Origin: Mytilus trossulus
Lineage: Eukaryota
DNA length: 64,000 bases
Direction of reading: 5' to 3'
Assembly: GCF_036588685.1 (NCBI RefSeq)
Contig: NC_086375.1
Coordinates: 58,342,001 to 58,406,000 of the forward strand
How positions within the stretch are numbered: position 1 is the first letter of the stretch; each line of letters begins with the position of its first letter. Positions 31,263 to 53,746 of this stretch are shown in pieces. Both the position numbers and the translations under genes were made by a program. The notes under the pieces were generated by a model. The model was given only the letters and a program-made list of their open reading frames with translations. It had not been told where the DNA came from and searched no databases.

Positions 31263-31360
31263 TATATAAATAACTTTTTTGTTTTTTGGAAGTGCAGACC
31301 TACTTGGCCCTTTTGATAGAAAAAACCATTATATAGAATAAAGAAGAGAAACATGTGAGT
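31263..31360 (+). promoter_or_regulatory. TATA box and non-coding exon 1 of peptide gene A
   Basis: TATATAAATA at 31263-31272 and donor acat|GTGAGT at 31355. The mirror copy keeps TATAAATA (55396-55403) and acat|GTAAGT (55317). Confidence 0.65.
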
Positions 31361-31634
31361 TCATTTTTAAATATAAAGTTAATGCCATCAATGAAGTTTA
31401 CAATCTCGATTGTCTTTTACCTAAGGGAACAAAGGGGTGGAGTTGGGTGAACATACTTAACATTATTTTAATTGGCTTTCACACATTTCTGTAAAAATTC
31501 GGTACTTTTTTTTGGGGGGGGGGGGGTCTCACAAAATTTGTTATAAAAAATCTTTTCATGTGAAAACATCTATTTACTCTTCCGGATTCAATCGTGAAGG
31601 TCATTTTGATTTAAAAAAAAATATTTTTCAGAAA

Positions 31635-31859
31635 ATGAAGAGTGTACTTTTTATTACTGTTATTGCTGTGACATTATTGTGTGTTGTAAATGGACGGGGT
31701 GGTTCTCCTGGTGCACCAGGAAGACCAGGAGAACCAGGACGACCTGGAGGAACTGATTGGGGGTTTGAAACTACTACTACTTGGCCTATTGATGGAGGCT
31801 GTGGAGGAGAACCTGGTTACCCCGGAGGCCAGGGAGGGAGAGGAGGAAGAGGCTGTTGA
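31635..31859 (+). CDS. Small secreted Gly/Pro-rich peptide precursor, copy A (74 aa)
   Basis: MKSVLFITVIAVTLLCVVNG|RGGSPGAPGRPGEPGRPGGTDWGFETTTTWPIDGGCGGEPGYPGGQGGRGGRGC*. Signal-peptide-like N-terminus; acceptor ttttcag (31631) 3 nt before the ATG; donor GTATGT (31868) 8 nt after the stop; acceptor at 32432; AATAAA at 32507. GC-rich island in AT-rich DNA with an intact paralogue. Confidence 0.9.
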   Translation: MKSVLFITVIAVTLLCVVNGRGGSPGAPGRPGEPGRPGGTDWGFETTTTWPIDGGCGGEPGYPGGQGGRGGRGC

Positions 31860-31892
31860 GGTTCAAGGTATGTGTTCGTTAGAATTAGAAAT

Positions 31893-32080
31893 TATTTACA
31901 ATATATGTTCTATATATTGTAAATAATTTCATGTTAAACTTTTAAACATGTTTAACTTTTTTTATTCGTAACATTTGTTCTATAAAACATTTTAAACTTT
32001 TTTATTCACAATACTTGTTCTAGAAAACATGTTAACCTTTTTTTTATTTACAATATTTGTTCAATAAAACATGTCAATCT
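31893..32080. repeat. AT-rich minisatellite in intron 2 of gene A (mirror at ~54629-54790)
   Basis: Repeated ttttttattcacaatatttgttctataaaacatgtt-like units of about 36-40 bp. Confidence 0.75.
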
Positions 32081-32699
32081 TTTTTAACCTCTGATAATGA
32101 AAGTCTTTTATAGCTGACTATGTGGTATAGGCTTTGCTAATTGTTGATGGCCGTGCGGTGACCTATATTTGTTAATTTCTGTGTCATTCTAGTCTCTTGT
32201 AGAGATTTGTCTCATTGGCAATCATACCACTACTTCTTTTTTTATTATGCGATATCAAAGATTTGAATAGCTTCTATTGATAAGTACAAAGTGGATTCAA
32301 AACAGAGAAAAAAAACACATTATAATGAAGTATTGAACAAAGGTACCATTTAGGTACTTGTATACATTGATTACTTTATAATTTTGCAAATAATATCAAA
32401 CCTGTTCCATTTATTAAGTTATTTCTTTTCAGAATTATTGGTTTCCCCGTCAATAGGGCTATTAGGAGATAGAAAAAGAGTTACCAAAAAGAATTTTGTA
32501 GTTTTTAATAAAAATATTTCAAATACAGCAATCTTATCAATGCATGCATTTTCACTATATGTAAGCGTCAACGTCATTTATAGATTTAACTTTGAGCACT
32601 AATTATGATATTTCTTTAAGAGAATATCTATAATTTTGGAGAAGATGATGCTTCGTTGATTATTGACCTCCAGTGGGAAATTAAATGCATATTCAGGAC

Positions 32700-32975
32700 G
32701 AAAATGTGACACGAATACAATCCATGCTTGTATTGGTAATAGACTGACACACTACGCCTTCTTTTCATAGCTAGTTCACAATTTAACAGTTCTAAAAAGA
32801 CATGTCGACTAAACGGAATCATTATTGTGACTCCAAGACGAATAGTTTTTGTTTTTCCCTGTAATTGCAGCGTGCAAAGCGGGAGGTTCAATTTTTTTCT
32901 CTCAAGTATTTGGTTTTACCTGGCCAAGGAGGATTGAATCCACGACCTCCCACATATGAAGCGAGCATGCTACAT
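32700..32975 (-). mobile_element. tRNA-derived SINE-like remnant (mirror at ~53555-54020, interrupted by an insertion)
   Basis: Minus strand reads tagcatgctcgcttcatatgtgggaggtcgtggattcaatcc, resembling a tRNA anticodon/T-arm with a B-box-like motif, followed by a non-tRNA body. Confidence 0.5.
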
Positions 32976-34394
32976 TGATAGACTGGAATATTAAAATTAT
33001 CAAACAAATCAATACTTTCATATCGTTTTTGTGATATGTTTTTTCCGAAGCTAACTGAAGTCTTAAAATACTTGATATAATATTTAAGGGATGAAGTGGC
33101 TTTTTTTTGGTGATGTGGAGGGAGGAGGGCGTGGTGCTTTAACGTACTTGCACAAAATGTATGACACTTTTATAAGAGTTTTTTACAAGGATATATGATG
33201 TAATCTGTTTTAAGGCGCTCTGTTGTTCTAATTTTATAAGTGAAAAACACAACAGCGACACCATCACAAAAATAGTCCTTAAAAAATACCAAAAAGACAA
33301 ATATCAGTGCTCGAAAATCTTCATAATAAAAATGTACTACGGGAATCGAATATCTAACAAAAACTGGTGATACCAGGTGTTCTTGAAGGGATTAAATGCA
33401 CCGTCCTTTTGCCCATCAGCCTCATCATTACTCATTATATCTGATATGGAACTTTGCAAAAAGTGTTTTATTTTTTATTTGCCCATAGGAAAACATTTCA
33501 ATTGTATGAATTCCATATAACTACAAATACTAAACAGTTTGTAAGTGTGCACTGTTAGTATCCACTATAATACCGACGTTTTGTTGAATTGTCAATCCGT
33601 CAAATTCAGTAAATATATACATGTCGATCAAATAGTCTAGCATTTCTAGGAGGATGGTTGAACGATAACAAACATAAATCGAACAACAAATGTTAAAAAG
33701 GCCAAAATAAGTACAATTTTGAAGAGCAATGAGAGCCAAATATGCAAGAGGTCTTTGTTTTCAAGCTTTTTCAGCTATATTAATTCCAATTATATAACCA
33801 GTCTTGTTGATCTTTTGTCTTGTAAAAGATGTTTCTTGTTTAAATTTTCACATTCGGTGGAGCAGAATCAGCTAACCATACCCCAGCTCTCGAGATAACT
33901 TCCGGTAATAAGTGCGGTTTGTGTTGCTAAGTCCATAGCTTTCCATGCTGTGTTTTTTATACTGTTGTTTCATTTGTCTTTTGGTCCTTATTTGTCATAG
34001 CGTTGTTATTCGAATTATGAAACTTGTACTCTCAAGCTTGACAGTGCACGTGGTTACAAAGCAAACGGTCGAAATCAACAATGACTTTTTATATCCAGTA
34101 AAAATTCTTAATATATTAGTTAAATAACTGCGACTAATTTCAAATTGGTACTGTCTAACTTTAGTGTTTTGTAAGTAATTGTTTTGCTTTGTATCGATCT
34201 GATGAGTCAAACCCTCTTTGAATTATTTTAATCGCCTTTTTGTCTTATCCTGTTACATCACTAACACATGTTTTGGGAGGATGGTCACCTGCAACCACTC
34301 ACAATCCAGGAAAGTAAGGAGCCAGTTATCCAGTGGGTGTCGTTATTTGCACCAACATGGGACGATTGGTTTTCTTGTTTGATACATTTTGTCA

Positions 34395-34617
34395 AGAGAA
34401 GACAAGACAAGACAATCTCTAAATACAATTTATTACAACTTAGGCACACGTATGGTGCTACAAGAGGATAACAATTATACATTAACAATTACATATATAC
34501 GTATACAATTACAAGCAAGACACACAATAAATTAATAATTGATATCATACAATAAAACTGAAATATATTTAGTTGATTTGTTTGCAAAATTCTTAATTGC
34601 AACGTAATTAGAAATTC
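34395..34617 (-). mobile_element. Left-arm-specific 5'-truncated LINE 3' end
   Basis: Absent from the right arm (empty site near 50335-50345). Flanked by tttgtca at 34388-34394 and 34618-34624; the minus strand ends AATAAA...(tgtct)n. Confidence 0.7.
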
Positions 34618-35289
34618 TTTGTCATGTTTGGTCCTTACATATTAATATTTTGTATGGTTTTGCTCATTGTTGAATGTCTTATGGTGACCTATATATCTAC
34701 AAATTTGGTCTCTGGTAAATAGTTACCTCACTGACTATCATGTTACATTTAGTACTTAATGCCTGTTGATTATTGATAGAAGGAGAACAATGATCACTCG
34801 GTCGCGTTCATTTTTTACTTTACAACAGAGGACATGTCGATTTAGAACAGTTAAGTCAATGTCAACAAAATCATTCTTATCTACTTTTCCTTTTCTATAA
34901 GATTAAAAACAAAATGATGAAAACGTCCAATAATATCACTGCAAGTCTTCCAGACTTTGAATGATAACTTTTATTTTTAATTTTTTTGTAATTGTATTTA
35001 AAATGTGACCTTTTAATAATGGGCTTTGAAGAGGAATGTGGTAAGATCGTAACTTCGTAGGATGAACCGAAAACTAAAAAAAGAAAAAAAGAAACTGCTT
35101 TTATCATTATTGAAGTTTGCACGGTGACATTAAGCTATTACCCTCATGTTCATTGATCTAAAAATTAAATCTTTCCATATTTTTTTTTCGCCCATTGCAC
35201 GGACTGTCAAGATTTCGAATCATGACATATATGTTGCATCCAAATCAATCATGAATGAAAAAACATCGGTATCACATTTCGTCAATACG

Positions 35290-36330
35290 AAAATTTGAGA
35301 CACCGATGACGTTTTACAAGGTCTGAGTAGCAGCTGCAATCTTTAGAATATCGTATGAATTGAAAATTGTATACGTCATACGCCAGTGAAGTAAGCACAT
35401 TGATGCTAAGATGAGCAAACTAAAACTTGCAAAATTGACATCGTCTCGTTTGTCATAGATAATAGTACCGAGATGACCGTTGTTTTCAAATTCGAGGTTA
35501 ATGTTTAGAAATGAAGCTGTGAATGTCGTTTCGTAAATCTCGAGTTCAGTAAGATATACTAGTATTAATGGCTAAGGGAAAGAACATCATCAATATACCT
35601 GAATGAGAATTTAAATAATCTAGCTTTTTTATCTTCTTTTTTTACAAGTGTCTGATGGAACTCCGAATCATGAAATTTAACAAAAGGAAATTGGTTTCTG
35701 ATTTCAAGGATGTGTGTTTTGTCGATAAAAAGAGTGAAACGGTTCGTGAAAAAATATCATAGTGTAATAACATATCTCCTTATCTTGCATGGCTCATGTA
35801 CTTGAAATATCATTAAAAACATCTTATTTAGTTGTCTTCCATTATTTAATTTTTGTTATAGAGGATATGTAGTAAATTATGTGTATAATCGTTTTTAGTG
35901 TAACGTTGACAGGCGTTGATAGGACGATACTTGATGAAGGCGTGACAAACTATAACTTTCCTCCAATCAACTACTAGTATCCCATTGAACACAGTGAATT
36001 AAGCGTTGGGGGTGACACGTGATGTTTCATCTCACAGGCATGGTCATTCATATCATTTTCAAAGTAAGGTTGACATTGACAAGTTGCTTTCAGACGCTGA
36101 CACGAGGTTATGTGTAATTCATTCCAAACCTAATTTGTTGCACTTCATAGGTGTAAGGTATTTTTTTTCTTCTTTCATATATACAACTTCCATTTTCTTG
36201 TGTATAATTAAGATAATAAGAATAAAATCAGTTCGCGAGATCTTTTTTAGAGCTGCGGTCCTATGGAAATTGTCTGTTTGATGCATTTACAAAAGAGTTT
36301 TCAACTGGTGAAACTATTATAAAGAATATC
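35290..36330 (-). mobile_element. Decayed Penelope-like RT
   Basis: FRYIDDVLSL and GHLGTIIYDKRDD motifs on the minus strand, heavily frameshifted. Confidence 0.75.
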
Positions 36331-38659
36331 ATTTATCATATATCATCCATTTATTATAAACATTTGTATTGAGTACTATGATTGTGTTTATACATCTAGT
36401 ACAAGATATTCTGATATATTTGATGAGTTGTTATCACCAGTATGAAGCGTCCTCGTGTTTACTATGTATGCTACCTTTTGAATTGGGTAAACAAACTCGT
36501 CGTTCCCGTAATCTCTAGCTGTATATTTAAGCGTTTTTTTTTAAGCGTTCCCATGTTTACAATTGTACTACCAGTTACGTTTAGTAAATCCTCATCTTTT
36601 AATTGCTAGCTTTTTATCTACGCGTCCACATGTTTACAATATATGCTGCCATTTACATTAAAGGAAACAGTACCATGAATCCTTAAGTCTGTAGATGTTC
36701 ATTTATAAACAATATAAAACGTCTTCCTATGTTAACCATAAAGCTACCTTTTGCATTAAGTATACAGTTTCATCGCGCTTTTCATCTATAGCTGGGTTTT
36801 TTTTACATTATGAAATATCCCCATGTTTACATTAAAGCTACTCGATTAAGTAACTTGTAATAATTCATCTTGTGACTATACACTTCCATAAAATATATTT
36901 ATGTAGATAGATAGTAAATGTAGGCAGCAGTTGTTTACCGATGTTTAAATCTCAATCGATTAAGAAGACAAATCTAGTAGCAAACATTAAATGAGGAAAT
37001 CACGTTTACTTCATCAGGGACAAGACCACTGTGTCTTAACCACACCGGCAAAATTTGATCGAACTCGATGGTATCTAACATCCGGCACAATGACGGAACA
37101 TTTAAAATAGACAGAAGAAAGATAGGTTTCTCTTTATTTTCTTATTTTTTTTTTATGATATCGAAGAATATATATAGATATACAACTATTTTCTATTGTG
37201 ATATGCAATATTTTCTACAACCGTTCTATATTAACGGAGAAATAAGTAAAAATGAACGTCAAAATGACGAGTGCAGTGAACCTTGCCTCGAAATTGTTTA
37301 ATTTCTCGTTAAATTGTTCACATTGTACGAAAAGAAAGGTTCTCTTTCTCCTCATCTCGAGACAGTTAAATTTTAGTATTTGGATTGCCAAGCTTTTTAA
37401 ATTAATGAAATTTAACTGTTTAGAGTGGAGAAATATCGTAATACACGAGTTACAGTGGAGGAATCTGTTTCTCTAATGATATTTGTCCTTTCTTTTCAAA
37501 GATTTGAAGAAAGTTGTATATTTTTATGTTACGTCATCAGACATTGTCGCCTTTTTTCATGATGCACAATAGGAAAATTCAAAAGAAACAAAGAACATTT
37601 AACGTCACATTCAAATTTCGACCAATCATTTGCCGCGAACAGATTTTCACTAGTGAGGAGAAATATTTTTCTCACACCGATCAAGAAATGTGAAAATAGC
37701 ACAAGAATTACAGATTTTGCATTCAGCATTTTTGTTATACATTCAGTATCTTTAATCCCAAGTTCACTGAGTAAAACGTTTTGGAATTTTGGGTCCTTTA
37801 TGCTCCTGAGCTTTGTACTTGTTTGGCTTTATAATTTTTTTGATCGGAACGTCAGTGTTAAATTTTATGAAGACGAAACACGCGTCTGGAGTTTTAAATT
37901 ATAAGCCTGACACCTTTAATAACTATAAGATGCAAGCACTCACTGCAATATTGGTTGTTACACCCAATACAACACAGTTGCATTGCGTATAACGTTTTTG
38001 ATATGTCCGTCAGTCTGTCAGACATGATCTTGCCTTCAAAACTCAATTGAAACAACACAATAACATTTCATGAATATTTGTACATGCAGATGATAGGGAT
38101 ATATGTGCATATCGACAAAAATAATGATTAAATATTTAATCAAAAAGAATTTTGGCCTAAATACCACCGCAACAGTTTGTCACTGCCACCCCACAAAACA
38201 GAATTTTACAGCACTTTGTAGTTAGTGAGGACACTATATGTAGATGTGCATATCCAAAGGAAAATTTTATAATATTTTAATGAGTTATAAGTCTTTGAAT
38301 TCCAGTGATAACGGGGGGGGGGGGGGCATGTGGTATGTTAGTGTGCTTACACACAGGTTTTGTTTTCTTATTTTAGTAAGAGGACAACCTCAAAGCAATT
38401 GATATTGAAATTCAAAAACAAAAAGTACAAGTCAAGTTGCTTTTTTTGTATGCAATCCGGTAAAGGACATCCATCCTTGTTGGCGTAGAGAGCGGCTTAC
38501 TCTATATCAGAAGGTTATAGACTATGATCGTGTTTACTAGTAGAATAAAACATACTATACTGGATGACACGTCGCCAAGGATAAAAAGGTGCCAATCGGG
38601 TGTTGTCACCGATTTTATCAGGTGTCAGCAGGATCACCTTACTGTTGCATTTATTTATA

Positions 38660-39580
38660 CTTGCTGCGAGCTTGAGTCTAGAGCGGCATAACTTCATATC
38701 AGTAGGTAAGGTACTATGAGTATGTTAACAATGCTTGCGAGATGGTATCTAGTGTAAAAAGACTTCATATCAGTAGGTCAGGTACTAGGGACATGTTAAC
38801 GGTTTTAGTTGGTTACCCCGATTTTGTTAATTGTCTATGGATTTATGAGCGGTATACTACTGTTGCCTTTATTAAACAATGACTGCAAGATGGAATCTAG
38901 AGCAGCATGATTTCATATCAGTTAGTCAGGTACTAGAAGCATGTTAACGATGACTGCAACATGGAGTCTACAGCGGCATGACTTCAAAGCAGTAGGTCAG
39001 GTACTTTTTGCATGTTTACAATGACTTCCAGCTGGAATCTAGAGTGATATAATTTCATATCAGTAATAGTTAGCAAAAGTACCAGGATTATAATTAAGTA
39101 CGCCAGGCGCGCGTTTCGTCTACATAAGACTCATCAGTGACGCTCAAATCGATTATTTATAAAGTAAGTCAGGTACTAGGAGCATGTTAACAATCACTGC
39201 AAGATGGAGTCTAGAGAGAAATTACTTCATATCAGTACGTAAGGTACTATGTACATGTTAACAATGACTTCGAGCTGGAGTCTAGAGCGGCCTGACTTCA
39301 TATCAGTATGTTATGTATTAGGGGCATGTTAACAATGACTGCAAGATAGAGTCAAAAAAAAGAAATGACTTTATATCAGTAGGTCATGTATTAGGGGCAT
39401 ATTAACATTGACTGCGCGATTGAGTCTAGAGCTGAATAACTTCATATCAGTAGGTCAGGTACTAGGAACATATTTGCAATGACTGCGAGCTGGATTCTAG
39501 AGTGAAAAGACTTCATATCAGTAGGTCAGGTACAATGTGCATGTTTACAATGACTGCGATCTGGAGTCTAAAGCGGCTAG
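38660..39580 (+). repeat. ~71-bp tandem repeat array (~11 diverged units) interrupted by two short insertions
   Basis: Unit gacttcatatcagtaggtcaggtactaggagcatgttaacaatgactgcgagctggagtctagagcggcat; period 71 (e.g. 39368, 39439, 39510). Confidence 0.9.
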
Positions 39581-40299
39581 AACTTTGCTCAGTGCTTGAA
39601 GCACTAAACGCATGCTCGAAATATGAAATCCAGCATTTTGATTGGTTGATTTTTAAAAATGAGTACAAAAACTGACTCGAAAGTTTTATGACCACAAGGC
39701 CTGAGCATAAGGTTAAGTACTATGAGCATATTATAATGGCTGTGAGCTGGAGTCAAAAATCGGCACGACATCTTATCATAAAGTTAAGTACTACAAATAT
39801 AAGCATGCTTACAATGGTTGCGACCCAATCACTCCCGTTAGTGGTTTAGTATCACACCATCATAACATATATGAGAAGAACATGACCTGTATTACACCAA
39901 AAACTGGTTTTAGAATAATTGTGTTTATTTGCGATTCAAAGCTCTATGAGTGAATCAATATTGATATCTTTCAATTGCTGTCTCATTGGCGTTATCCCAT
40001 TTCTAATTTCAAATACCTTTATGGTTACAATTTATTTTACAAATATAATACAATTAGTGATTGACAGTTAGTTAAGGATTTAATACTTCATAAACTCATC
40101 GAATTAAAACCATCCAAGCGCTAGAAAAAAAACCCAGTCATTATGTTCTCTTACGTCTGAAAAGAAAAGAAAAATGTGATATCTTTGGTTTTCGCCAGTT
40201 GATAAGTTCAACGAATATACATGTAAACTACAAACAAAAATCAAATATTCCAAAGCCAAAAATATTATGATTTAATATCTAATATATTCACACATTTCC

Positions 40300-41335
40300 T
40301 TTTTAGCTCACCTGGCCCGAAGAGCCAAGTGAGCTTTTCTCACCACTTGGCGTCTGTCGTCCGTCGTCCGTCGTCGTCGTCGTTATCTTTTTACATTTTG
40401 AACTTCTTCTAGAGAACCACTGAATGGAATGAACCCAAACATGGCATGCATGTTCCTTATGAGGTGCCGAACAAGTGTTTTTACTTTGTAGCTGATTCAT
40501 CATCCAAGATGACCGCCAGCTGGGGACTTAGTTTAACATAGGACCCTATGGGAAATGCATACACAAGACTTCTCTTAGAGAACCACTGAATGGAATGAAA
40601 CCAAACATGGCACGAATGTTCCTTATGAGGTGCTGACTAAGTGTTGTTACTTTGTATCCGATCCATCATCCAAGATGGCCACCTGCGGGGGACTTAGTTT
40701 TACATAGGACCCTATGGGAAATGCATACAAATGAATTCTTTTATAGAACCACTGAATTGAATGAAACCAAACATGGCATGAATGTTCCTCATGAGGTGCT
40801 GACCAAGTGTTGTTACTTTGTAGCCGATGCATCATCCATAATGGCCGCCTGCGTGGACTTAGTTTAACATATGACCCTATGGGAAATATATGCAAGTGTC
40901 TTCTTTATAGAACCACTGAATGGAATGAAACCAAACGTTGCATGAATGTTCCTTATGAGGTGCTGACCAAGTGTTGTTACTTTGTAGCCGATCCAATATC
41001 CAAGATGGCCGCCAGCAGGGGGACTTAGTTTAACATAGGACCCTATGGGAAATGCATTCAAATGCTTCTTTTAGAGAACCACATAATGAAATAAAACAAA
41101 ACATAGCATGAATGTTCCTTATAATATGAGTTGCTGACCAAGTGTTGTTACTTTGTAGCCGATCTATCATCCAAGATGGCCGCCAGTGGGGGAACTTTTG
41201 AATGAAATCGAACATAGCCTGAATGTTACTTTCCTTATGAGGTTGTGTTGTTACTTTTAGCCAAATTTTATATTTTTTTATATGATTTAAAAACCCAAGT
41301 AGAATCAGGTGAGCGATACAGGCTCTTGAGAGCAA
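40300..41335 (+). mobile_element. Helentron-associated non-autonomous element (HINE/DINE-1/pearl-like) with ~5 internal 166-bp tandem repeats
   Basis: Subterminal inverted repeats ttagctcacctg / caggtgagcga, a (cgtc/gtc)n microsatellite, 166-bp period (40411, 40577, 40743) and a 3' hairpin ggctcttgagagc. Confidence 0.85.
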
Positions 41336-41838
41336 AAAAGGACAAAGAAGAAAAACAACGTTGCATCGTGACACTATTTTTTCAACCTGTATTCTACCTA
41401 AGGTTGATATCATAAACTTGCATTAAGTTTTGGTGTTAACGGCAAACTTTTGGCCTGTTCCATTAACATCATATTTATTTGCCCTTATGAATAAACCCTT
41501 TGAATGCAATGCTCAAAAACGTTTTAAAGCATTTTACTTTTGAATTTTTTACTCGACAACTTACTTACAACAACAACAAAAAACATAAAAAAAACCACAG
41601 GTTCGATTGAAACTTAATTTTAGAAATTATTGGACGTTTAAAATCAACATGTAACGATTGCCTATGTTATCATAAAGATACTCGTTCTCCTTTTAAAAAG
41701 AAGGGAACGTTTGATTGCCTGGCAAAATATTTTCAGTATTTTGAGAAAAAGAATTTCGTTGTTTGTTATTTCATTGTAACAAGGAGTAGCATATGACACT
41801 TTGGAAAATCGTTTTTTAAATGAATATGTTAACCTCAT

Positions 41839-41997
41839 TCATTTTCTTCTGCCTCCTCCTCCGAAATCACCAACGGCTCCTCCTCTTTCTGCACCACGAC
41901 CTCCAGGGCTGAAACTTAAACCAGTACCACGACGACCAGGTGTTGCAGATGTTATTTGTAGTATGGCAGTCAATAGAAGAAATAGAAAGTACAACAT
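41839..41997 (-). CDS. Small secreted Gly/Arg-rich peptide precursor C (52 aa) in the palindrome spacer; not in the ORF track
   Basis: Manual translation MLYFLFLLLTAILQITSA|TPGRRGTGLSFSPGGRGAERGGAVGDFGGGGRRK*. Hydrophobic signal ending TSA; acceptor aaatcag|G directly before the ATG; candidate donor ATGAG|GTTAAC 5 nt after the stop; candidate acceptor ttttgccag at 41719-41720; TATA-like TTTAAATA at 42178-42185. Confidence 0.82.
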   Translation of the reverse strand: MLYFLFLLLTAILQITSATPGRRGTGLSFSPGGRGAERGGAVGDFGGGGRRK

Positions 41998-42934
41998 CCT
42001 GATTTTAAACCTTGAAAAAATAACTCAAAATGTAACACTTTGGATTGATATTACCTAAATGAGATAATACACTTACAAAAAAAAAAAAATTTAACTCCAG
42101 TTGTCAAAACAAAGGTTCATCTGTGAACTAACCGTCATCGGAACAGATTTGTTGTCTGTGATTTTGCTTTTTTCAACTATTTAAACACCTTACAAGTGTA
42201 CACTATATGAACATTTGATAAAAGAAGGAACAATTGGTAGAGTAGCTTTTCTGTACATTACATCAAAGTTATATGATTCAATTGATGTTATACAGCGTTG
42301 AAAACACACAATTCCTTTTCGGGGTTCGTGTTGTGTGCAATCTGTAGTTTTCTATGTTCTGTTTAGAACAAAGTTGTTTGTTGTTTTGTGTCATGGTTTT
42401 GTCAGTTTATCTTCATATTTTAATTCTGAATGTCACTTTTGACCTTTCGCCTTTCTGTTGTCCTAATCTGTAGTGTTCTAAAGATTGATAAATTTATTTG
42501 AATTTGATACTTCTATATTAGAATGTAGAAAAAGTTTTTCCTTCTTGATGGTTTATGTAACAAGCAATATTTGATGAATATAATTAATCTGTAGTTAAAA
42601 AAAAAGAAGATTTTCCTTCAACATGAAAGAAAGAATTTTGTTTTCTAACTAAGTTGGTTTCGAGTTGTGTACGATTTTGGCTTAAATATTTTTGTTCAAC
42701 TAGATGTGGATGATTGTCGAGTAAAAAATTCTAAAGTAAAATGCTTTAAAACGTTTTTGAGCATTGCATTCAAAGGGTTTATTCATGAGGGAAAATAAAT
42801 ATGATGTTTATGAAAAAGGCCAAAAGTTGGCCGTTAACACCAAAACTTAATGCAAATGTATGATATCAACCTTAGGTAGAATACAGGTTGAAAAATAGTG
42901 TCACGATGCAACGTTGTTTTTTTCCTTGTTTTTT

Positions 42935-43937
42935 TTTTTAAATCATATAAAAAATATAAAATTTGGCTAAAAGTAACAACACAACCTGATAAGGAAAGGA
43001 ACATTCAGGCTATGTTTGATTTCATTCAAAAGTTCCCCCACTGGCGGCCATCTTGGATGATAGATCGGCTACAAAGTAACAACACTTAATCAGCAACTCA
43101 TATTATAAGGAACATTCATGCTATATTTTGTTTTATTCCATTCTGTGGTTCTCTAAAAGAAGTCATTTGAAAGCATTTCCCATAGGGTCCTATGTTAAAC
43201 TAAGTCCCCCTGTTGGCGGCCATCTTGGATGTTGGATCGGCTACAAAGTAACAACACTTGGTCAGCACCTCATAAGGAACATTCATGCAACGTTTGGTTT
43301 CATTCCATTCAGTGGTTCTATAAAAAATATAAAGAAGACACTTGCATATATTTCCGATAGGGTCCTATGTTAAACTAAGTCCACGCAGGCGGCCATCATG
43401 GATGATGCATCGGCTACAAAGTAACAACACTTGGTCAGCACCTCATGAGGAACATTCATGCCATGTTTGTTTTCATTCCATTTAGTGGTTCTATAAAATA
43501 ATTCATTTGTATGCATTTCCCATAGGGTCCTATGTAAAACTAAGTCCCCCGCAGGTGGCCATCTTGGATGATGGATCGGCTAAAAAGTAACAACACTTGG
43601 TCAACACCTCATAAGGATCATTCGTGCCATGTTTGGTTTCATTCCATTCAGTGGTTCTCTAAGAGAATTCATTTGTATGCATTTCTCATAGGGTCATAGG
43701 GTCCTATGTTAAACTAAGTCCCAAGCTGGCGGTCATCTTGGATGATGGATCGGCTACAAAGAAACAACACTTGTTCAGCACCTCATAAGGAACATTCATG
43801 CCATGTTTGGTTTCATTCTATTCAGTGGTTCTCTAGAAGAGGTTCAAAATGTAAAAAGTTAACGACGACGACGACGGACGACAGACGCCAAGTGGTGAAA
43901 AAAGCTCACTTGGCTCTTCGGGCCAGGTGAGCTAAAA
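42935..43937 (-). mobile_element. Mirror copy of the HINE-like element, lacking the 3' hairpin end
   Basis: Reverse complement of 40300-41290; ends caggtgagctaaaa at ~43937. Confidence 0.85.
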
Positions 43938-44649
43938 AGGAAATGTGTGAATATATTAGATATTAAATCATAATATTTTTGGCTTTGGAATATTTGATTT
44001 ATGTTTGTAGTTTACATGTACATTCGTTAAACTTATCAACTGGCGAAAACCAAAGATATCACATTTTTCTTTTCTTTTCAGACGTAAGAAGAACCTAATG
44101 ACTGGGTTTTTTTCTTCTAGCGCTTTGATGGTTTTAATTCGATGAGTTTATGAAGTATTAAATCCTTAACTAACTGTCAATCACTAATTGTATTATATTT
44201 GTAAAAAAAAATTATAACCATAAAGGTATTTGAAATAAGAAATGGGATAATGCCAATCAGACAGCAATTGAAAGATATCAATATTGATTCACTCATAGAG
44301 CTTTGAATCGCAAATAAACACAATTATTCTAAAAACCAGTTTTTGGTGTAATACGGGCCATGTTCTTCTCATATATTTTAAGATGGTGTGATACTAAACC
44401 TCTAACGGGAGTGATTGGGTCGCAACCATTGTAAGCATGCTTATATTTGTAGTACTTAACTTTATGCCGATTTTTGACTCCAGCTCACAGCCATAATAAT
44501 ATGCTCATAGTACTTAACCTTATGCTCAGGCCTTGTGGTCATCAAACTTTTGAGTCAGTTTTTGTACTCATTTTTAAAAATCAACCAATCAAAATGCTGG
44601 ATTTCATGTTTCGAGCATGCGTTTAGTGCTTCAAGCACTGGGCAAAGTT

Positions 44650-45720
44650 CAGCCGCTTAAGACTCCAGATCGCAGTCATTGTAAACATGCACATAGTACC
44701 TGACCTACTGATATGAAGTCATGCCGCTCTAAAACTCCAGCTCGCAGTGATTATAAACAAGCTAATAGTACCTCACCTAACAATATGGTGTTATGGCGCT
44801 CTATACTCAACCTCGCAACCGCCATTGTAAACATGCACATAGTACCTGACCTACTGATATGAAGTCAGTTCACTCTAGAATCCAGCTCGCAGTCATTACA
44901 AATATGCTCCTAGTACCTGACCTACTGATATGAAATTATTCAGCTCTAGACTCAATCGCGCAGTCAATGTTAATATGCCCCTAATACATGACCTACTGGT
45001 ATAAAGTCATTTCTTTTTAGACTCTATCTTGCAGTCATTGTTAACATGCCCCTAATACATGACCTACTGATATGAAGTCATGCCGCTCTAGACTCCAGCT
45101 CGAAGTCATTGTAAACATGTACATAGTACCTTACGTACTGATATGAAGTCATTTCACTCTAGACTCCATCTTGCAGTGATTGTTAACATGCTCCTAGTAC
45201 CTGACTTACTTTATAAATAATCGATTTGAGCGTCACTAATAAGTCTTATGTAGACGAAACGCGCGCCTGGCGTTCTAAATTATAATCCTGGTAAGCTTGA
45301 TAACTATTACTGATATGAAATTATGCCACTCTAGATTCCAGCTGGAAGTCATTGTAAACATGCAAAAAGTACATGACCTACTGCTTTGAAGTCATGCCGC
45401 TGTAGACTCCATGTTGCAGTCATCGTTAACATGCTTCTAGTACCTGACTAACTGATACGAAATCATGCTGCTCTAAATTCAATCTTGCAGTCATTGTTTA
45501 ATAAAAGCAACAGTAGTATACCGCTGTTCAAAACTCATAAATCCATAGAGAATTAACAAAATCGGGGTAACCAATTAAAACCGTTAACATGTCCCTAGTA
45601 CCTGATCTACTGATATGAAGTCTTTTTACACTAGACACCATTTCGCAGGCATTGTTAACATACTCATAGTACCTAACCTACTGATATGAAGTCATGCCGC
45701 TCTAGACTTAAGCTCGCAGC
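44650..45720 (-). repeat. Mirror copy of the 71-bp array with two extra units
   Basis: Reverse-complement units with the same interrupting insertions; extra ~146 bp at ~44720-44865. Confidence 0.9.
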
Positions 45721-48659
45721 AAGTATAAATAAAGGCAACAGTAAGATGATTCTGCTGACACCTGATAAAATCGGTGACAACACCCGATTGGCACCTTTTT
45801 ATCCTTGGCGACGTGTCATCTAGTATAGTATGTTTTACTACAAATCACGATCATAGTCCATAACCTTCTGATATAGAGTAAGCCGCTCTCTACGCCAACA
45901 AGGATGGATGTCATTTATCGGATTGCATACAAAAAAAGCATAGAGGGAAATCTCTCAGTATATATTTTTTCATAGATACATTTGCATCAATCAATAAGGT
46001 CGAGAAATTGTCTTAATAATCAGAGCAAGTTCATCGAATAAACTCAATGACATCATAGATACCACAAATAAATGTGTCTACGCCAGACGCTAATGGAAGA
46101 ACCGCAATGATTAAAATAAAATACACCGAAAGTGGTTTCATCGAAACGCTGGACGTTTTGATCGACAACATATTCATTGAACTTGATGGATTTGGGCAAT
46201 CGGTATTCAAATTCATTACTTATTGTGCACTTTTTATGGCCGACTTGACTTGTACTTTTTTTTTTAATTTCAATATCAATTGCTTTGAGGTTGTCCTCTT
46301 ACTAAAATAAGAAAACAAAACCTTTGTGTAAGCACACTAACATACCACATCCCCCCGTTATCACTGGACAAACAAATAAACAGATTTCTAATTTCTAATT
46401 CAAAGACTTATAACTCATAAAAATATGATAGAATTTTCCTTTAGATATGCACATCTACATATAGTGTCCTCACTAACTACAAAGTGTTGTAAAATTCTGT
46501 TTTGTGGGGTGGCAGTGACAAACTGTTGCGGTGGTATTTAGGCCAAAATTCTAAGGGGGCGTATATTTTAGATTAAATATTTAATCATTATTTTTGTCGA
46601 TATGCACATCTACATATGTCCTTATCATCTGCATATACAAATATTCATGAAATGCTATTGTGTGGTTTCAATTGAGTTTTGAAGGCAAGATCATGTCTGA
46701 CAGACTGACGGACAGATCAAAAACGTTATAAAGAATGCAACTGTGTTGAATTGGGTGTAACAACCAATATTTCAGTGAGTGCTTGCATCTTATAGTTATC
46801 AAAGGTGTCAGGCTTATAATTTAAAACTCCAGACACGTGTTTCGTCTTCATAAAATTCAACAGTGATGTTCCGATCAAAAAAATTATAAAGCCAAACAAG
46901 TACAAAGCCCAGGAGCATTAAGGACCCAGAATTCCAAAACGTTTTACTCAGTGAACTTGGGATTAAAGATACTTAATGTATAACAAAAATGCTGAATGCA
47001 AAATCTGTAATTCTTGTGCTATTTTCACATTTCTTGATCGGTGTGAGAAAAATATTTCTCCTCACTAGTGAAAATCTGTTAGCGGCAAATGATTGGTCGA
47101 AATTTGATTGTGACGTTAAATGTTCTTTGTTTCTTTTGAATTTTCCTATTGTGCATCATGAAAAAAGGCGACAATGCCTGATGACGTAACATAAAAACAC
47201 ACAAATTTCTTCAAATCTTTGAAAAGAAACAGTTAAATTTAACTAATTTAAAAAGCTTGGCAATCCAAATACTAAAATTTAACTGTCTCGAGAGGAGAAA
47301 TATCGTTACACACTGGTTGCAGTTGTGAAATCTATATTTCCAATGGTTAATGTCATATTTCTGAGCTGTACCATACTAACTGCCCGTCGTACGGCGTTTA
47401 CATATATCAATTAAAACGTTATCAAAGTTCGTTTCTTAAATCACTGGCGTCACGCTATCGCACGGTTTTTCGTTCATTTTTTTGCACATAAATCAGGCTG
47501 TTAGATTTCTCATTTGAATTGGTTTTCCGTTGTCATTTCGGGGCCTTTTATAGCTGACAATGCGGTATGGCTTTGCTCATTGTTGAAAGCCGTACGGTGA
47601 ACTATAGTTGTTAATTTCTGTGTCATATGGTCTCTTGTGAAGAGTTGTCTCATTGAAAAATCATACCACATCTCCTTTTTTATATTTGATTTGTTAATTG
47701 GATACTAGAAAAATTGTCTAATCCGTATGAATTAACTGTTTACAAACCACGGATTAGATTACTAAAGATGTATTTAGCAAAACCTTTTTGGAATTTCGGG
47801 TCCTCAATGCTCTATATGTAAGTACTTTATTTAGTTTTTAATACTTTTTTATTCGAGAGTCAATCCAGATTTCCATTTATTTACTGGTTGTGACATTTTG
47901 ACATGATGCATCACGGAATGCATGAGACGCGTTTCCTGACAACACACCCGGTCTTGTCGCTGATGAAGTAAACGTAATTTCCTCATTTAATGTTTGCTAC
48001 TTGATTTGTCTTCTTAATCGATTGAGATTTAAACATCGGTAAACAACTGCTGCCTACATTTACTATCTATCTACATGAATATATATTATGGAAGTGTATA
48101 GTCACAAGAAGAATTATAACAAGTTTATACTTAATCGAGTAGCATTTATGGTAAACATGGGGATATTTCATACTGTTAAAAAACCCAGCTATAGATGAAA
48201 TGCGCGATGAAACTGTTCACTTAATGCAATAGGTAGCTTTATGGTAAACTTAGGAAGACGTATTATATTGTTTATAAATGAACATCTACAGACTTAAGGA
48301 TTAATGGTACTGTTTCCTTTAATGCAACTGGCAGCATATATTGTAAACCTGTGGACGCGTAGATAAATAGCTAGCAATTAAAAGATGAGGATTTACTAAA
48401 CGTAACTGGTATTACAATTGTAAACATGGGAACGCTTAAAAATTTAGATATATAGCTAGAGATTACGGGAACGACGAGTTTGTTTACCAAATTCAATAGG
48501 TAGCATACATAGTAAACACGAGGACGCTTCATACTGGTGATAACAACTCATCAAATATATCAGAATATCTTGTACTAGATGTATAAATACAATCATAGTA
48601 CTCAATACAAATGTTTATAATAAATGGATGATATATGATAAATGATATTCTTCATAATA

Positions 48660-49680
48660 GTTTCACCAGTTGAAAACTCTTTTGTAAATGCATCAAACAG
48701 ACAATTTTCATAGGACCGCAGCTCTAAAAACGATCTCGCGAACTGATTTTATTCTTATTATCTTAATCATACACAAGAAAATGGAAGTTGTATATATGAA
48801 AAAAGAAAAAAAATACCTTACACCTATGAAGTACAACAAATTAGGTTTGAAATGAATTACACATAACCTCGTGTCAGCGTCTGAAAGCAACTTGTCAATG
48901 TCAACCTTACGTTGAAAATGTTATGAATGTAATGCCTGTGAGATGAAACATCACGTGTCACCCCAACGCTTAATTCACTGTTTTCAATGGGATACTAGTA
49001 GTTGATTGGATGAAAGTTATAGTTTGTCACGCCTTCATCAAGTATCGTCCTATCAACGTTTGTCAACGTAACACTAAAAACGATTATACACATAATTTAC
49101 TACATATCCTCTATAACAAAATTAAATAATGAAAGACAACTAAATAATATGTTTTTTAATGATATTTCAAGTACATGAGCCATGCAAGATAAGGATATAT
49201 GTTATAACAGTATGATATTTTTTCACAAACCGTTTCATTCTTTTTATCGACAAAACACATATCGTTGTAATCAGAAACCAATTTCCTTTTGTTAAATTTC
49301 ATGATTCGGAGTTCCATCAGACACTTGTAAAACAAGAAGATAAAAAAGCTAGATTATTTAAATTCACATTCAGGTATATTGATGATGTTCTTTCCCTTAG
49401 CCATTAATATATCTTACTGAACTCGAGATTTACGAAACGACATTCACAGCTTCATTTCTAAACATTAACCTCGAATTTGACAACAACGGTCATCTCGGTA
49501 CTATTATCTATGACAAACGAGACGATATCAATTTTGCAAGTTTTAGTTTGCTCACCTTAGCATCAATATGCTTACTTCACTGGCGTATGACGTATACAAT
49601 TTTCAATTCATACGATATTCTAAAGATTGCAGCTGCTACTCAGACCTTGTAAAACGTCATCGGTGTCTCAAATTTTCGTA
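48660..49680 (+). mobile_element. Mirror copy of the decayed Penelope-like RT
   Basis: ttcaggtatattgatgatgttctttcc (FRYIDDVLS) at ~49369; reverse complement of 35290-36330. Confidence 0.75.
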
Positions 49681-52600
49681 TTGACGAACAGTGATACCGA
49701 TATTTTTTTTTTGTTCATGATTGATTTGGATGCAACATATATGTCATGGTTCGAAATCTTCTTGACAGTCCGTGCAATGGGCGAAAAAAAATATGGAAAG
49801 ATTTAATTTTTAGATCAATGAACATGAGGGTAATAGCTTAATGTCACCGTGCAAACTTCAATAATGATAAAAGCAGTTTCTTTTTTTCTCTTTTTTTAGT
49901 TTTCGGTTCATCCTACGACGTGACGATCTTACCACATTCATCTTCAAAACCCATTATTAAAAGGTCACATTTTAAATACAATTACAAACAAATTAAAAAT
50001 AAAAGTTATCATTCAAAGTGATATTATTGGACGTTTTCATCATTTTGTTTTTAATCTTGAAGAAAAAAGGGAAAAGTAGATAAGAATGATTTTGTTGACA
50101 TTGACTTAACTGTTCTAAATCGACATGTCCTCTGTTGTATAGTAAAAAAAGAACGCGACCGAGTGATCATTGTTTTCTTTCTATCAATAATCAACAGGCA
50201 TTAAGTACTAGATGTAACATGATTGTCATTGAGGTAACTATTTACCAGAGACCAAATTTGTAGATATATAGGTCACCATAAGACAGTCAACAATGAGCAA
50301 AACCATACAAAATATTAATATGTAAGGACCAAACATGACAAAATGTATCAAACGAGAAAACCAACCGTCCCATGTTGGTGCAAAAAACGACACCCACTGG
50401 ATAACAGGCTCCTTACTTGGCTTTATTGTGAGTGGTTGCTGGTGACCATCCTCCCTAAACATGTGTCAGTGATGTAACAGGATAAGAAAAAAGGCTATTA
50501 AAATCAATCAAAGAGGGTTTGACTCATCAGATCGATACAAAGAAAAACAATAACTAACAAAACACCAAAGTTAGACAGTACCAATCTGAAAGTAGTCGCA
50601 GTTACATAAACTTGTTAACAGCCTAAATAACTTTAATATATTAAGATGTTTTACTAGAAATAAAAATCCATTGTTGATTTCGAATTTTCGATTTTCAACA
50701 ATGAGCAAAACCATACAAAATAGTAATATGTAAGGACCAAACATGACAACGAGAAAACCAACCGTCCCATGTTGGTGCAAAAAACGACACCCACTGGATA
50801 ACAAAATGATGTATATCGCTTTCATATTCATTTGTTAAAATTTACTGGTTGCAATAGCATTAAGTGTTCTATATTATAAGGATGTTCTTATCCCGTGCAT
50901 AAAAACAATGCCGTGTTTGTCATAACCTTTTCAACTTTTGATCTTCAGTGCTGTACAACTTTGTACCGTTTTCACGTTCGATCTTTTATATCTAGGCGTT
51001 ATGTATTCAGGTTTAGTTTTCTGTAATTTTTATACTTCAGTTTCTTTATGTATATCTCTTTCATATTCATTTGATAAAATTTACTGTTTGCAATAGCATG
51101 AATTGTTCTATATAATAAGAATGTTCTTATCCCGGGCATAAAAACAATGTCGTATTTGGCGAAACCTTTTCAACTTTTGATCTTCAGTGCTGTACAACTT
51201 TGTACTTTTTTCACTTTCGATCTTTTATATCTGGGCGTCACTGTGGACCAGGCGCGTTTTTGGCGTATTGAATTTTAAACCTGATGCTTTTTGTCATCTA
51301 TTAATCATGTTTTTCTTTGTCTAATATGTTCTCCTATTTATTTGTATTGTAGTCCTGTAATATTATGTTGTCATTTCAATATTATATTTAACTTTGCCAT
51401 TAAAGTGCGAGGTTTGGCATGCCATAAAACCAGGTTTAACCCACCACTTTTATTCCCCTTTAAAAGTGTCCTGTACCAAGTCAGGAAGATGGTCATTGTT
51501 ATATTGTTGTTCGTTTCTCTGTGTGTTGCATTTTAACGTTGAGTCGTTTGTGTTTTCTCTTATTTTTGAGATATTGAGATAAGACGTGGCACGGTACTTG
51601 TCTATCCCAAATTCTTGTATTTGGTTTTCATGTTATATTTGTTATTCTCGTGGTGTTTTGTCTAATGATTGGTCAGTTTCTGTGTGTGTTGCGTTTCGGT
51701 GTTGTGTCGTTGTTCTCCTCTTATATTTAATGCGTTTCGCTCGGTTTTGGTTTGTTACCCCGATTTTGTTTTTTGTCCATGGATTTATGAGTTTTGAACA
51801 GCGGTATACTACTGTTGCCTTTATTTACCAATCTGAAAGTAGTCGCAGTTACTTAAACTTGTTAACAGCCTAAATAACTTTAATATATTTAGATGTTTTA
51901 CTAGAAATAAAAATCCATTGTTGATTTCGACCGGTTGCTTTGTTACCACGTGCACTGTCACGCTTGAGAGTACAAATTTCATAAGTCAAATAACAACGCC
52001 ATGACTAAACAAGAACTATCTTTAAAAAAAGATATCCGACGTATTAAAATTTGAGTATATGCTTACAACTATCATTTCGATAACCTTTAGAAGCACAATG
52101 ACTTAATGATGCAGGACCTCTTTAATAAAATCTCCATCTGAATGTAACTACAAGAAATTCATTACTAAGTCTGATTATATTAAGGCAATAATATATAAAA
52201 AATATTGTGATGACACCTACAAATTTTATTTGTCAAAAAATCCAGTACAAATAACAAGAAACAAATATACATTGATTACTGTTTACATTAAACTTAATTC
52301 ATGGTTAACAAAGCTAGAAACTATTGGTAGTAGTATCTTTCTGTTTACATTCGCCAAAACCCCGCGGAAATCTCATATGCATAGGTGCGTTCTAAAAGTC
52401 ATGTACGTTTGAACAACAAAGTTTACATTTAAAATTATAACATTGTCCCGAATAAATAGCTGTCATGGATGCAAAGAGCTATTGGAGAAACAATTAGTTT
52501 AGTAAAAATACAATTCTTTGTAAGATCTAGTTCAAATATTTATAGTTTTTCACTTGCTTTCCATCATGATATAATTTTCGAGACGTTTTTTCAAACACAA

Positions 52601-53562
52601 CCAAATCACCCACCATGACAGCATTTTGTCCAATCACAGAAAGGATTTTCGAGCATGCGTATTCTGTTGCCATAGTCAAGCGTCCTCAAGTTCAAAGGGC
52701 ACACACCGAACTATACCGACTACGTCGGAAAAAGGACTAAAAGACAAATGAAATAACAGTTTACAAAACACAGCATGGAAAGCTATGGACTAATCAACAC
52801 AAACCGCATTAATTACCGGAAGTGATCTCGAGAGCTGGGGTAGGGTTAGCTGATTCCGTTCCATCGAATGTGAAAATTTAAACAAGAAACATCTTTTACA
52901 AGACAAAGGATCAACAAGACTGGCTTTATAATTGGAATTAATATAGCTGAAATCTTTCCTACAGGCAAAATGAAAACAAAGACCTCTTGCATATTTGGCC
53001 CTCAATTCTCTTCAAAATTGTACTTATTTTGGCCTTTTTAACATTTGTTAATTCGAGCGTCTCTTATGAGTCTTTTGTAAAACAATTACCTCAGGTCGAC
53101 ATCCACTAAAATACAGGCTACTGACTGTTGACAGACATTTAGAATATTGTCTGTTTGTGAACGTTAAACCATCCTCCTAAAAACGCTAGACCTTGTGATC
53201 GACATATACACATTTACTGAATTTGACAATTCAACAAAACGTCGGTACTATAGTGGATACTAACAGTGCACACTTACAAACTGTTTAGTACTTAAAGTTA
53301 TTTGAATCGGAATTCATACAGTTGAATAAATCTTTTCCTTAAGGCAAATAAAAAAAAACACTTTTGCAAAGTTCCATATCAGATATAATGTATAAAGATG
53401 AGGCTGATGGGCAAAATGACAGTGCAATTGAAACCTTCAAGAAGTTATTTTAACAAGTATTTTAAGACTTCAGTTAGCCTCGGAAAAACCAAATCACAAA
53501 TACGATATGAAAGTATCGATTTCTTTGATAATTTAAATATTCCAGTCTATCAACGTAGCATG

Positions 53563-53746
53563 TCCAGGCATATATTACCGTAGCCGTATTTGGCACAACC
53601 TTTTGGAATTTTGGATCCTTAATGCTCTTCAACTTTGTACTTGTTTGGCTTATAAACATTTTGATATGAGCGTCACTGATGAGTCTTATATAGACGAAAC
53701 GCGCGTCTGGCGTACTAAATTATAAACTTGGTACCTTTGATAACTA
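53563..53746. mobile_element. Right-arm-specific short interspersed repeat insertion
   Basis: Splits tagcatg|tcgcttcatatg, which is uninterrupted in the left arm (~32953-32972). Same family as copies at ~37780-37925 and ~39066-39165. Confidence 0.75.

What the first reader, a model, noticed from the sequence alone, without database searches (positions are those of the whole stretch)
41560..42713. Hidden 52-aa prepropeptide gene fills the palindrome spacer and ends in an amidation signal
Seen: minus-strand ORF 41997-41839, below the ORF-track cutoff and masked by an antisense Pro-rich shadow ORF. It has an 18-aa signal and the 34-aa peptide TPGRRGTGLSFSPGGRGAERGGAVGDFGGGGRRK (13 Gly, 6 Arg + 1 Lys, 2 acidic, net +5). 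Established: Gly followed by basic residues is the convertase/carboxypeptidase/PAM amidation signal. Inference: it is either a linear cationic Gly/Arg-rich antimicrobial peptide or, after cleavage at both GRR sites, the neutral 25-mer GTGLSFSPGGRGAERGGAVGDFGGG-amide. The candidate promoter, introns and 3' exon all fit inside the single-copy spacer.
Basis: partly seen in the sequence, partly recalled or inferred. Interest (0 to 1): 0.85.

Follow-up and report, generated by a model that had tools for sequence, protein, structure and literature searches.

The report
Unannotated mussel glycine-rich secreted peptide gene
A tiny, unannotated mussel gene in the middle of a large DNA palindrome most likely encodes a secreted glycine/arginine-rich peptide with a C-terminal amidation-type tail. 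It belongs to a very small family with a conserved signal peptide. Its function, perhaps antimicrobial, has not been tested.

Summary
The 52-aa minus-strand ORF is at 41839-41997, inside the 1154-nt spacer, under an 85-aa Pro-rich antisense ORF. It is the only one of 166 ATG-ORFs of 40 aa or more in the window with both a hydrophobic N-terminus and a G-basic-basic end.

It is more than chance:
- A paralog 28 kb away (65% identity, 12-nt in-frame indel) and three Logan-derived proteins (P0001, P0003, P0008) share the signal peptide and end in RRK-stop.
- P0008 keeps 18 of 21 signal residues but has a very different mature part.
- GT/AG signals are conserved on the minus strand.
- One contig of a related animal joins a foreign exon to the conserved acceptor 13 nt upstream of the ATG.

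Corrections and weak points:
- The 5' acceptor is at 42012-42011, not 41998.
- The first GRR site is absent from the paralog, so the 25-mer is not a conserved product.
- The processed 30-mer carries only about +2 to +3.
- The ancestral start (MKI) is mutated here, and the ATG used lies two codons downstream.
- dN/dS of 0.61 is not informative, and P0004 is frameshifted.
- No RNA evidence exists for this genome.

Best reading: a real, lineage-restricted secreted-peptide gene, possibly for host defence. The scan had not reported it on other DNA.

The parts
41839..41997 (-). Complete CDS of gene C (52 codons plus TGA at 41841-41839) in one exon
   Evidence: Homologs of the same layout appear.
41944..41997 (-). 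Signal-peptide-like region MLYFLFLLLTAILQITSA (18 aa), with predicted cleavage after Ala18
   Evidence: The best 10-residue Kyte-Doolittle mean is 3.0. The segment is the most conserved part of the family, with 18 of 21 residues identical between P0001 and P0008. The cleavage site is inferred from the -3/-1 rule. SignalP was not available.
41842..41943 (-). Gly/Arg-rich propeptide of 34 aa. The last four codons (41853-41842) encode G-R-R-K, a substrate-type tail for carboxypeptidase and PAM
   Evidence: GRRK-stop is also present in the paralog, P0001 and P0003. P0008 ends LRRK-stop.
41998..42010 (-). 13-nt 5'UTR part of exon 2. It holds ATC AGG, the mutated ancestral Met-Lys codons
   Evidence: The alignment with the paralog shows ATG AAG ATT against ATC AGG ATG. 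P0001, P0003 and P0008 start MK.
42011..42076 (-). Putative intron 1 (66 nt): donor GTAAGT at 42076-42071, acceptor AG at 42012-42011
   Evidence: Donor (GTAAGT/GTGAGT) and acceptor (caAG|G / caacAG|GG) are conserved with the paralog. The X1 contig leaves the genome exactly at 42011. Use of this particular donor is not shown.
42077..42158 (-). Putative 5'UTR exon 1, with a TATA-like TTTAAATA at 42185-42178 upstream
   Evidence: Inference only. The block 42077-42129 is conserved with the paralog and to 42138 with the locus behind P0004. The transcription start is not determined.
41719..41833 (-). Putative intron 2 in the 3'UTR (115 nt), starting 5 nt after the stop codon
   Evidence: AG|GT is conserved 5-6 nt after the stop in the paralog. 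The acceptor context TATTTTGCCAG|G is identical in the paralog. The paralog carries about 750 extra nt inside this interval. No RNA evidence.
41606..41718 (-). Putative 3'UTR exon 3. Its end and poly(A) site are unknown
   Evidence: Conserved with the paralog to about 41688 and with the P0004 locus to 41606. Inference.
41560..42713 (.). Spacer of the large palindrome. The gene model occupies about 41606-42185. A 66-nt high-copy repeat lies at 42543-42609

Best explanation
Gene C is a real, small, lineage-restricted (Mytilus) gene. Its whole coding sequence lies in one exon (41997-41839, minus strand), bracketed by a short 5'UTR intron ending 13 nt before the ATG and probably by a 3'UTR intron starting 5 nt after the stop. 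It encodes a prepropeptide with three parts: an 18-aa signal peptide, a 30-aa flexible Gly/Arg-rich peptide, and a terminal Gly-Arg-Arg-Lys. Inferred processing: signal peptidase cuts after Ala18; a carboxypeptidase E/D-type enzyme trims K, R and R; peptidylglycine alpha-amidating monooxygenase turns the exposed Gly into a C-terminal amide. The product would be TPGRR...DFGGG-NH2. The gene belongs to a tiny family with a conserved signal peptide, a fast-diverging mature part and an invariant RRK-stop. That is the pattern of secreted defence effectors, so the most likely role is an extracellular host-defence (antimicrobial or mucosal) peptide. Shown here: the ORF, its homologs, the conserved splice signals, and one spliced-looking contig in a relative. 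Inferred: secretion, amidation and function.
For: The ORF and its composition are. Only two copies exist in the 1.3-Gb genome, so it is not a transposon ORF. The paralog at G000:C3:58411582-58411728 is 65% identical, has a 12-nt in-frame indel, and shares signal peptide and GRRK-stop. P0001 and P0003 (54 aa, 81% identical) and P0008 (65 aa) come from other assemblies and share signal and RRK-stop. Between P0008 and P0001 the signal is 18/21 identical, but the mature part matches at only 14 of 33 aligned positions, plus gaps. GT donor and AG acceptor are conserved on the minus strand on both sides of the CDS. The X1 contig (94% identical over 41877-42011) switches exactly at the acceptor to a sequence that in genomic copies is followed by GTAAAA. 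This is a GT-AG junction, not a transposon end. The neighbouring small secreted-peptide gene A has the same layout of CDS in one exon between tight introns. Myticalins also have a 5'UTR intron just before the ATG and a Gly before basic residues that is read as an amidation signal (PMC5577615, PMC12294457).
Against: There is no RNA evidence from this genome. The only run found is labelled RNA by guess, and it gives one 176-nt contig of depth 5 from a divergent animal, whose 5' exon is transposon-derived and absent from this window. dN/dS against the paralog is 0.61, not significantly below 1 by my rough test (p about 0.2), and the antisense frame scores 0.44. The ancestral start codon is mutated in this copy, leaving a signal peptide with no basic n-region. 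P0004, a paralog-like copy elsewhere, is frameshifted before GRRK. No intact paralog-like protein was found in the 5.8-billion-protein set. The processed peptide is only weakly cationic and not amphipathic. P0008 lacks the Gly before RRK. There is no match in Pfam, Rfam or the ESM Atlas.
Confidence: 0.6

Rival explanations
1. The ORF is a non-functional relic: a decaying or never-functional ORF in a duplicated about 530-nt block. It stays open only because the Gly-rich (GGN) composition has few stop codons.
For: dN/dS is 0.61 and not distinguishable from 1. The antisense shadow frame is open too. The ancestral ATG is lost in this copy. A frameshifted relative, P0004, exists. No RNA from this genome. 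No annotation anywhere.
Against: Neutral decay would not keep the signal peptide at 86% identity while the mature part falls to about 40%. It would not keep RRK-stop in four diverged sequences, nor a replacement in-frame ATG with A at -3 two codons downstream. It would not keep GT/AG signals at four positions. The X1 junction uses the acceptor.
Confidence: 0.2
2. It is a secreted structural or adhesive mini-protein (byssus, mucus or shell matrix) rather than an immune effector.
For: The mature part is Gly/Arg-rich and disordered. The neighbouring genes A and B encode small Gly-X-Y collagen-like secreted peptides. From my own knowledge, mussel foot proteins include small polymorphic Gly/Arg-rich species.
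Against: The mature part of gene C has no Tyr, so no DOPA chemistry. It has no Cys and no repeats, and it is only 30 aa long. There is no sequence similarity to A or B.
Confidence: 0.08
3. It is a neuropeptide or hormone precursor that yields an amidated signalling peptide, for example the 25-mer between the two GRR sites.
For: Signal peptide, dibasic sites and a C-terminal Gly-basic amidation motif are the classic neuropeptide grammar.
Against: The first dibasic site is not conserved in the paralog. The mature region is hypervariable between family members. The family is found only as a few unnamed sequences, with no conserved relatives in 1.8 billion representatives. Neuropeptides are normally conserved across molluscs.
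Confidence: 0.07
4. The plus-strand Pro-rich ORF (41801-42058) is the real coding frame and the minus-strand ORF is its shadow.
For: It is longer (85 aa), also open in the paralog (68 aa), and its dN/dS is 0.44.
Against: It has no ATG start in the window (TTG). Start and stop positions are not conserved with the paralog. It has no signal or other feature. All conserved splice signals and the X1 junction are in minus-strand sense.
Confidence: 0.02

Closest known systems
Myticalins (linear cationic gill antimicrobial peptides of Mytilus; PMC5577615, PMC12294457)
   Same: Same genus. Both are cysteine-free linear peptides behind a signal peptide. Both have a short 5'UTR exon with the first intron just before the ATG, and one exon that carries signal, mature peptide and basic site. 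Both have a Gly before basic residues read as a CPE/PAM amidation signal. Both have a second intron shortly after the basic site, small clustered hypervariable paralogs, and pseudogenised copies.
   Different: Gene C has no anionic C-terminal extension: the stop codon follows RRK directly, so intron 2 would be in the 3'UTR and not a phase-1 coding intron. Its mature part is Gly-rich (13 of 30) and only weakly cationic, whereas the paper reports myticalins with pI above 11 and Pro/Arg/aromatic-rich composition.
Arthropod glycine-rich antimicrobial peptides (e.g. armadillidin, PMC5031766; serrulin, PMC6784228; hyastatin)
   Same: They are linear, Cys-free, Gly-rich and modestly cationic. Some are C-terminally amidated, they are secreted, and they are intrinsically disordered.
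   Different: There is no detectable homology. The arthropod peptides usually carry repeated GGGF(H/N)R-type motifs and His/Tyr. Gene C has no internal repeat and a lower charge. [quoted passage not shown]
Genes A and B in the same window (31635-31859 + and 54819-55049 -)
   Same: They are small secreted Gly-rich peptides with the whole CDS in one exon bracketed by tight UTR introns. They lie in the same 33-kb palindrome.
   Different: There is no sequence similarity. A and B have Gly-X-Y collagen-like blocks, Trp/Thr linkers, Cys residues and no basic amidation tail.

Membership tests
Myticalin family | Tripartite precursor: signal peptide, strongly cationic mature peptide, anionic C-terminal extension after a dibasic site | tested here: not met
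   The stop codon follows RRK directly, there is no extension, and no GT lies before the stop that could splice it out. The definition is from PMC12294457.
Myticalin family | Three exons and two introns: intron 1 in the 5'UTR just before the ATG, and intron 2 a phase-1 intron inside the CDS | tested here: inconclusive
   An intron-1-like acceptor lies 13 nt before the ATG and is conserved and used in X1. The putative intron 2 lies 5 nt after the stop, so it is not in the CDS. Neither intron is confirmed by RNA from this genome.
Myticalin family | Detectable sequence similarity, chiefly of the signal peptide, to known myticalin precursors, and location in the myticalin gene cluster | not tested
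   The papers' held text and the supplement parts I read gave no full precursor sequences. I opened only part 1 of 3 and part 1 of 4 of the two supplements.
Glycine-rich antimicrobial peptides (functional class) | Secreted, Cys-free, at least about 25-40% Gly, net positive charge | tested here: met
   The predicted 30-mer has 12 of 30 Gly, 4 Arg against 1 Glu and 1 Asp, and no Cys, behind a signal-like N-terminus.
Glycine-rich antimicrobial peptides (functional class) | Demonstrated antimicrobial activity, or induction by infection | not testable with these tools
   This needs synthetic peptide MIC assays and expression data.
C-terminally amidated secretory peptides | Gly directly before C-terminal or cleavable basic residues in a protein that enters the secretory pathway | tested here: met
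   GRRK-stop is present in gene C, the paralog, P0001 and P0003. P0008 has LRRK-stop, so the motif is not universal in the family. The chemistry itself was not tested.

The most novel reading that the evidence does not exclude
Gene C and its relatives are the first glycine-rich, C-terminally amidated host-defence peptide family of bivalves. They would be an unannotated class, variable in presence and absence, that evolved the same exon layout as myticalins (or branched from them by gaining a stop right after the basic site). If so, mussels have a linear antimicrobial peptide type until now thought to be missing from the group.
Probability: 0.25. Interest if true: 0.7.

Novelty: new variant of a known kind. 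Interest (0 to 1): 0.5.

Why it matters
Mussels are a model for hyperdiverse innate-immune effectors that vary in presence and absence between individuals. The group that curates their antimicrobial peptides states that no glycine-rich peptide is known in any bivalve (PMC12294457). A real gene of this type would add a new effector class. It would also show that sub-60-aa single-exon genes escape current mussel annotation, since neither this protein nor its paralog is in the 15-billion-protein collection. It gives a concrete synthetic target, a 30-mer amide, for activity tests. If it proves to be a relic, it is a useful caution about Gly/Pro shadow ORFs.

Tried and rejected
That position is coding in the paralog and in P0001, and the conserved, used acceptor is at 42012-42011.
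- X1 loose end as a transposon insertion boundary: rejected. Homology among element copies runs through the junction, which sits at a GT.
- The X1 5' exon in this window: absent at up to 3 mismatches. It has about 607 copies genome-wide.
- dN/dS as proof of coding: uninformative, and it cannot separate the two strands because third positions coincide.
- Transposon ORF: rejected, since only two copies exist.
- Relation to genes A and B: none.
- Pfam, Rfam and the ESM Atlas: nothing.
- Paralog as query in the 5.8-billion-protein set: nothing.
- P0008-type gene in this genome: absent.
- Myticalin comparison: one typed mature peptide hit only an unrelated Pro/Arg ORF.
- The run search and read laying are capped at one call each and gave only run X1.
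- BLASTP of the P0004 tail against the window ORF missed the 3' homology. tblastn showed it.

Full report
**Observation**

Its tail has 13 Gly, 6 Arg, 1 Lys and 2 acidic residues. An 85-aa Pro-rich plus-strand ORF (41801-42058, TTG start) overlaps it in the frame whose third codon positions coincide. GC rises to 56% over the ORF against 22-33% around it.

The ORF lies in the 1154 nt between inverted arms 41378-41559 and 42714-42895. Among 166 ATG-ORFs of 40 aa or more in the window, 9 start with a signal-like hydrophobic stretch and 1 ends in G[RK]2-3. Only this ORF does both. Only three ORFs reach 20% Gly: this one and genes A and B.

**Context**

Matching inverted segments run from about 27.4 kb to 41.56 kb and from 42.71 kb to about 60.6 kb. 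Identity is about 98% near the centre and about 92% at the outside.

- Each arm carries an element with 4.8 tandem units of 166 nt.
- The flank of that element, 41200-41333, is high-copy in the genome, while 41334-41559 is unique to the two arms.
- The spacer is not entirely single-copy: 42543-42609 is a 66-nt high-copy repeat.

**Relatives**

The 1.3-Gb assembly holds exactly two copies. The second lies 28 kb away on the same strand (G000:C3:58411582-58411728, locus L014). It encodes a 58-aa protein starting MKILFYLFLLMTGILHMTSA and ending GRGSGRRK-stop.

- DNA homology with the window spans 41791-42129.
- A separate 3' block, window about 41688-41775, is also homologous. In the paralog it is displaced by an insertion of about 750 nt.

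Public protein sets hold only unnamed Logan-derived relatives:

| Protein | Length | Features |
|---|---|---|
| P0001, P0003 | 54 aa | 81% identical, MKILYFLF... to ...GGRGRRK |
| P0008 | 65 aa | Signal nearly the same (18/21), mature part very different with two Cys, ends GLRRK |
| P0004 | 183 aa | Read-through ORF of genomic DNA, collinear with window 42138-41606, frame shifts in the GGA run before GRRK |

Neither the window protein nor an intact paralog-like protein is in the collection. The family is therefore unannotated.

**Which strand, and is it a gene?**

dN/dS between the two genomic copies is 0.61 (11.5 synonymous and 21.5 non-synonymous changes). That is not significantly below 1. 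The antisense shadow frame gives 0.44, so this test decides nothing.

The following points do discriminate:

1. The signal peptide is far better kept than the mature part.
2. RRK-stop is invariant in four diverged sequences.
3. The only indel between the two genomic copies is 12 nt, in frame.
4. Splice signals are conserved in minus-strand sense:
   - GTAAGT/GTGAGT at 42076;
   - caAG|G / caacAG|GG at 42012-42011;
   - AG|GT 5-6 nt after the stop;
   - TATTTTGCCAG|G at 41720-41719.
5. In run X1, a 176-nt contig that is 94% identical over 41877-42011 leaves the genome exactly at the acceptor.
   - It continues into a sequence found about 607 times in this genome.
   - In genomic copies that sequence lies about 75 nt inside a transposon end.
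   - There it reads ...ATGGCGACGGCAGATATAG|GTAAAATC, and homology among the copies continues past the junction.
   - The junction is therefore GT-AG and not an insertion boundary.
   - This is best read as a spliced RNA in which a transposon-derived 5' exon is joined to exon 2.

That contig shows the acceptor is functional in a relative. It does not show expression in this animal. The transposon piece is absent from the window, the run is labelled RNA only by guess, and depth is 5.

- The acceptor at 41998 is wrong. In the paralog and in P0001 those bases are the Met-Lys codons.
- In the window the ancestral ATG AAG ATT has become ATC AGG ATG. Translation must start two codons downstream, with A at -3, and the signal peptide loses its Lys.
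- The first GRR is GGR in the paralog, so the neutral 25-mer is not a conserved product.
- After trimming of RRK and amidation, the 30-mer carries 4 Arg against 2 acidic residues.
- In P0008 the residue before RRK is Leu, so amidation is not universal in the family.

**Mechanism**

What is shown is the sequence grammar. The rest is inferred from established secretory-pathway biochemistry, which is cited for molluscs in PMC5577615:

1. Co-translational entry into the ER through the 18-aa signal, with cleavage after T-S-A.
2. Trimming of K, R and R by a carboxypeptidase E/D-type enzyme.
3. Amidation of the exposed Gly by PAM.
4. Release of a disordered Gly-rich peptide.

A conserved signal, a hypervariable mature part, clustered paralogs and broken copies elsewhere form the pattern of mussel defence-peptide families. 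I therefore rank a host-defence role first.

**Comparison with known families**

Myticalins share the genus, the linear Cys-free design, the 5'UTR intron just before the ATG, one exon for signal, mature peptide and basic site, and the Gly-basic amidation motif. Gene C fails their defining tripartite structure because it has no anionic extension. It also differs in composition.

Arthropod glycine-rich antimicrobial peptides are the closest functional analogues, but they are not homologous. PMC12294457 states that no glycine-rich peptide is known in mussels or any bivalve.

Pfam, Rfam and the ESM Atlas gave nothing.

**Limits**

- The run search and read laying are capped at one call each.
- SignalP was unavailable.

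**Verdict**

| Claim | Probability |
|---|---|
| Real secreted-peptide gene | about 0.6-0.7 |
| C-terminally amidated product | about 0.5 |
| Antimicrobial function | about 0.25-0.3 |

Noticed in passing
window 27400-41559 and 42714-60640: A palindrome of about 33 kb. Its arms are 92% identical at the outside, rising to 98% near the centre, around the 1154-nt spacer. It could be a real inverted segmental duplication or an assembly fold-back of diverged haplotypes.
   Followed up: partly
window 31635-31859 (+) and 54819-55049 (-): Genes A and B are arm copies that encode 74-76-aa secreted peptides with Gly-X-Y blocks and a terminal Cys. Gene A has an acceptor cag 3 nt before the ATG and a GT donor 9 nt after the stop, the same tight single-CDS-exon layout as gene C. 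They show no similarity to gene C and no Pfam hit.
   Followed up: partly
window 40402-41193 and 43034-43840 (flank to 41333): Each arm holds 4.8 tandem units of 166-174 nt. The adjoining 134 nt (41200-41333) match hundreds of places in the genome at 92-98%, so this is a high-copy element with a satellite-like core. From memory, it resembles the roughly 160-170-nt ApaI-type repeats of Mytilus.
   Followed up: partly
window 42543-42609: A 66-nt repeat inside the supposedly single-copy spacer, with at least 38 copies at 88-95% identity (the number scored and listed; a lower bound). Run X1 holds it in contigs of depth 47-97.
   Followed up: no
L015:1456-1700 (G000:C2:38305704 region) and about 600 other places: A transposon whose end region holds ATGGCGACGGCAGATATAG followed by GTAAAATC. 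Copies often occur as inverted pairs 2-4 kb apart. In run X1 this 19-nt ATG-bearing piece is spliced onto gene C exon 2, in frame with the CDS (MATADIGFKIRMLYF...).
   Followed up: partly
L014:1853-2090 and L014:588-1437: The paralog locus carries a tandem duplicate of about 240 nt covering the start of exon 2, intron 1 and exon 1. It also carries an insertion of about 750 nt in the putative 3'UTR intron.
   Followed up: partly
P0007 (190 aa, unknown source): Four repeats, each containing NPGGRGAERAG, almost identical to SPGGRGAERGG of gene C (E = 7e-5 in the 1.8-billion library). It may be chance low-complexity similarity or a translated repeat.
   Followed up: no
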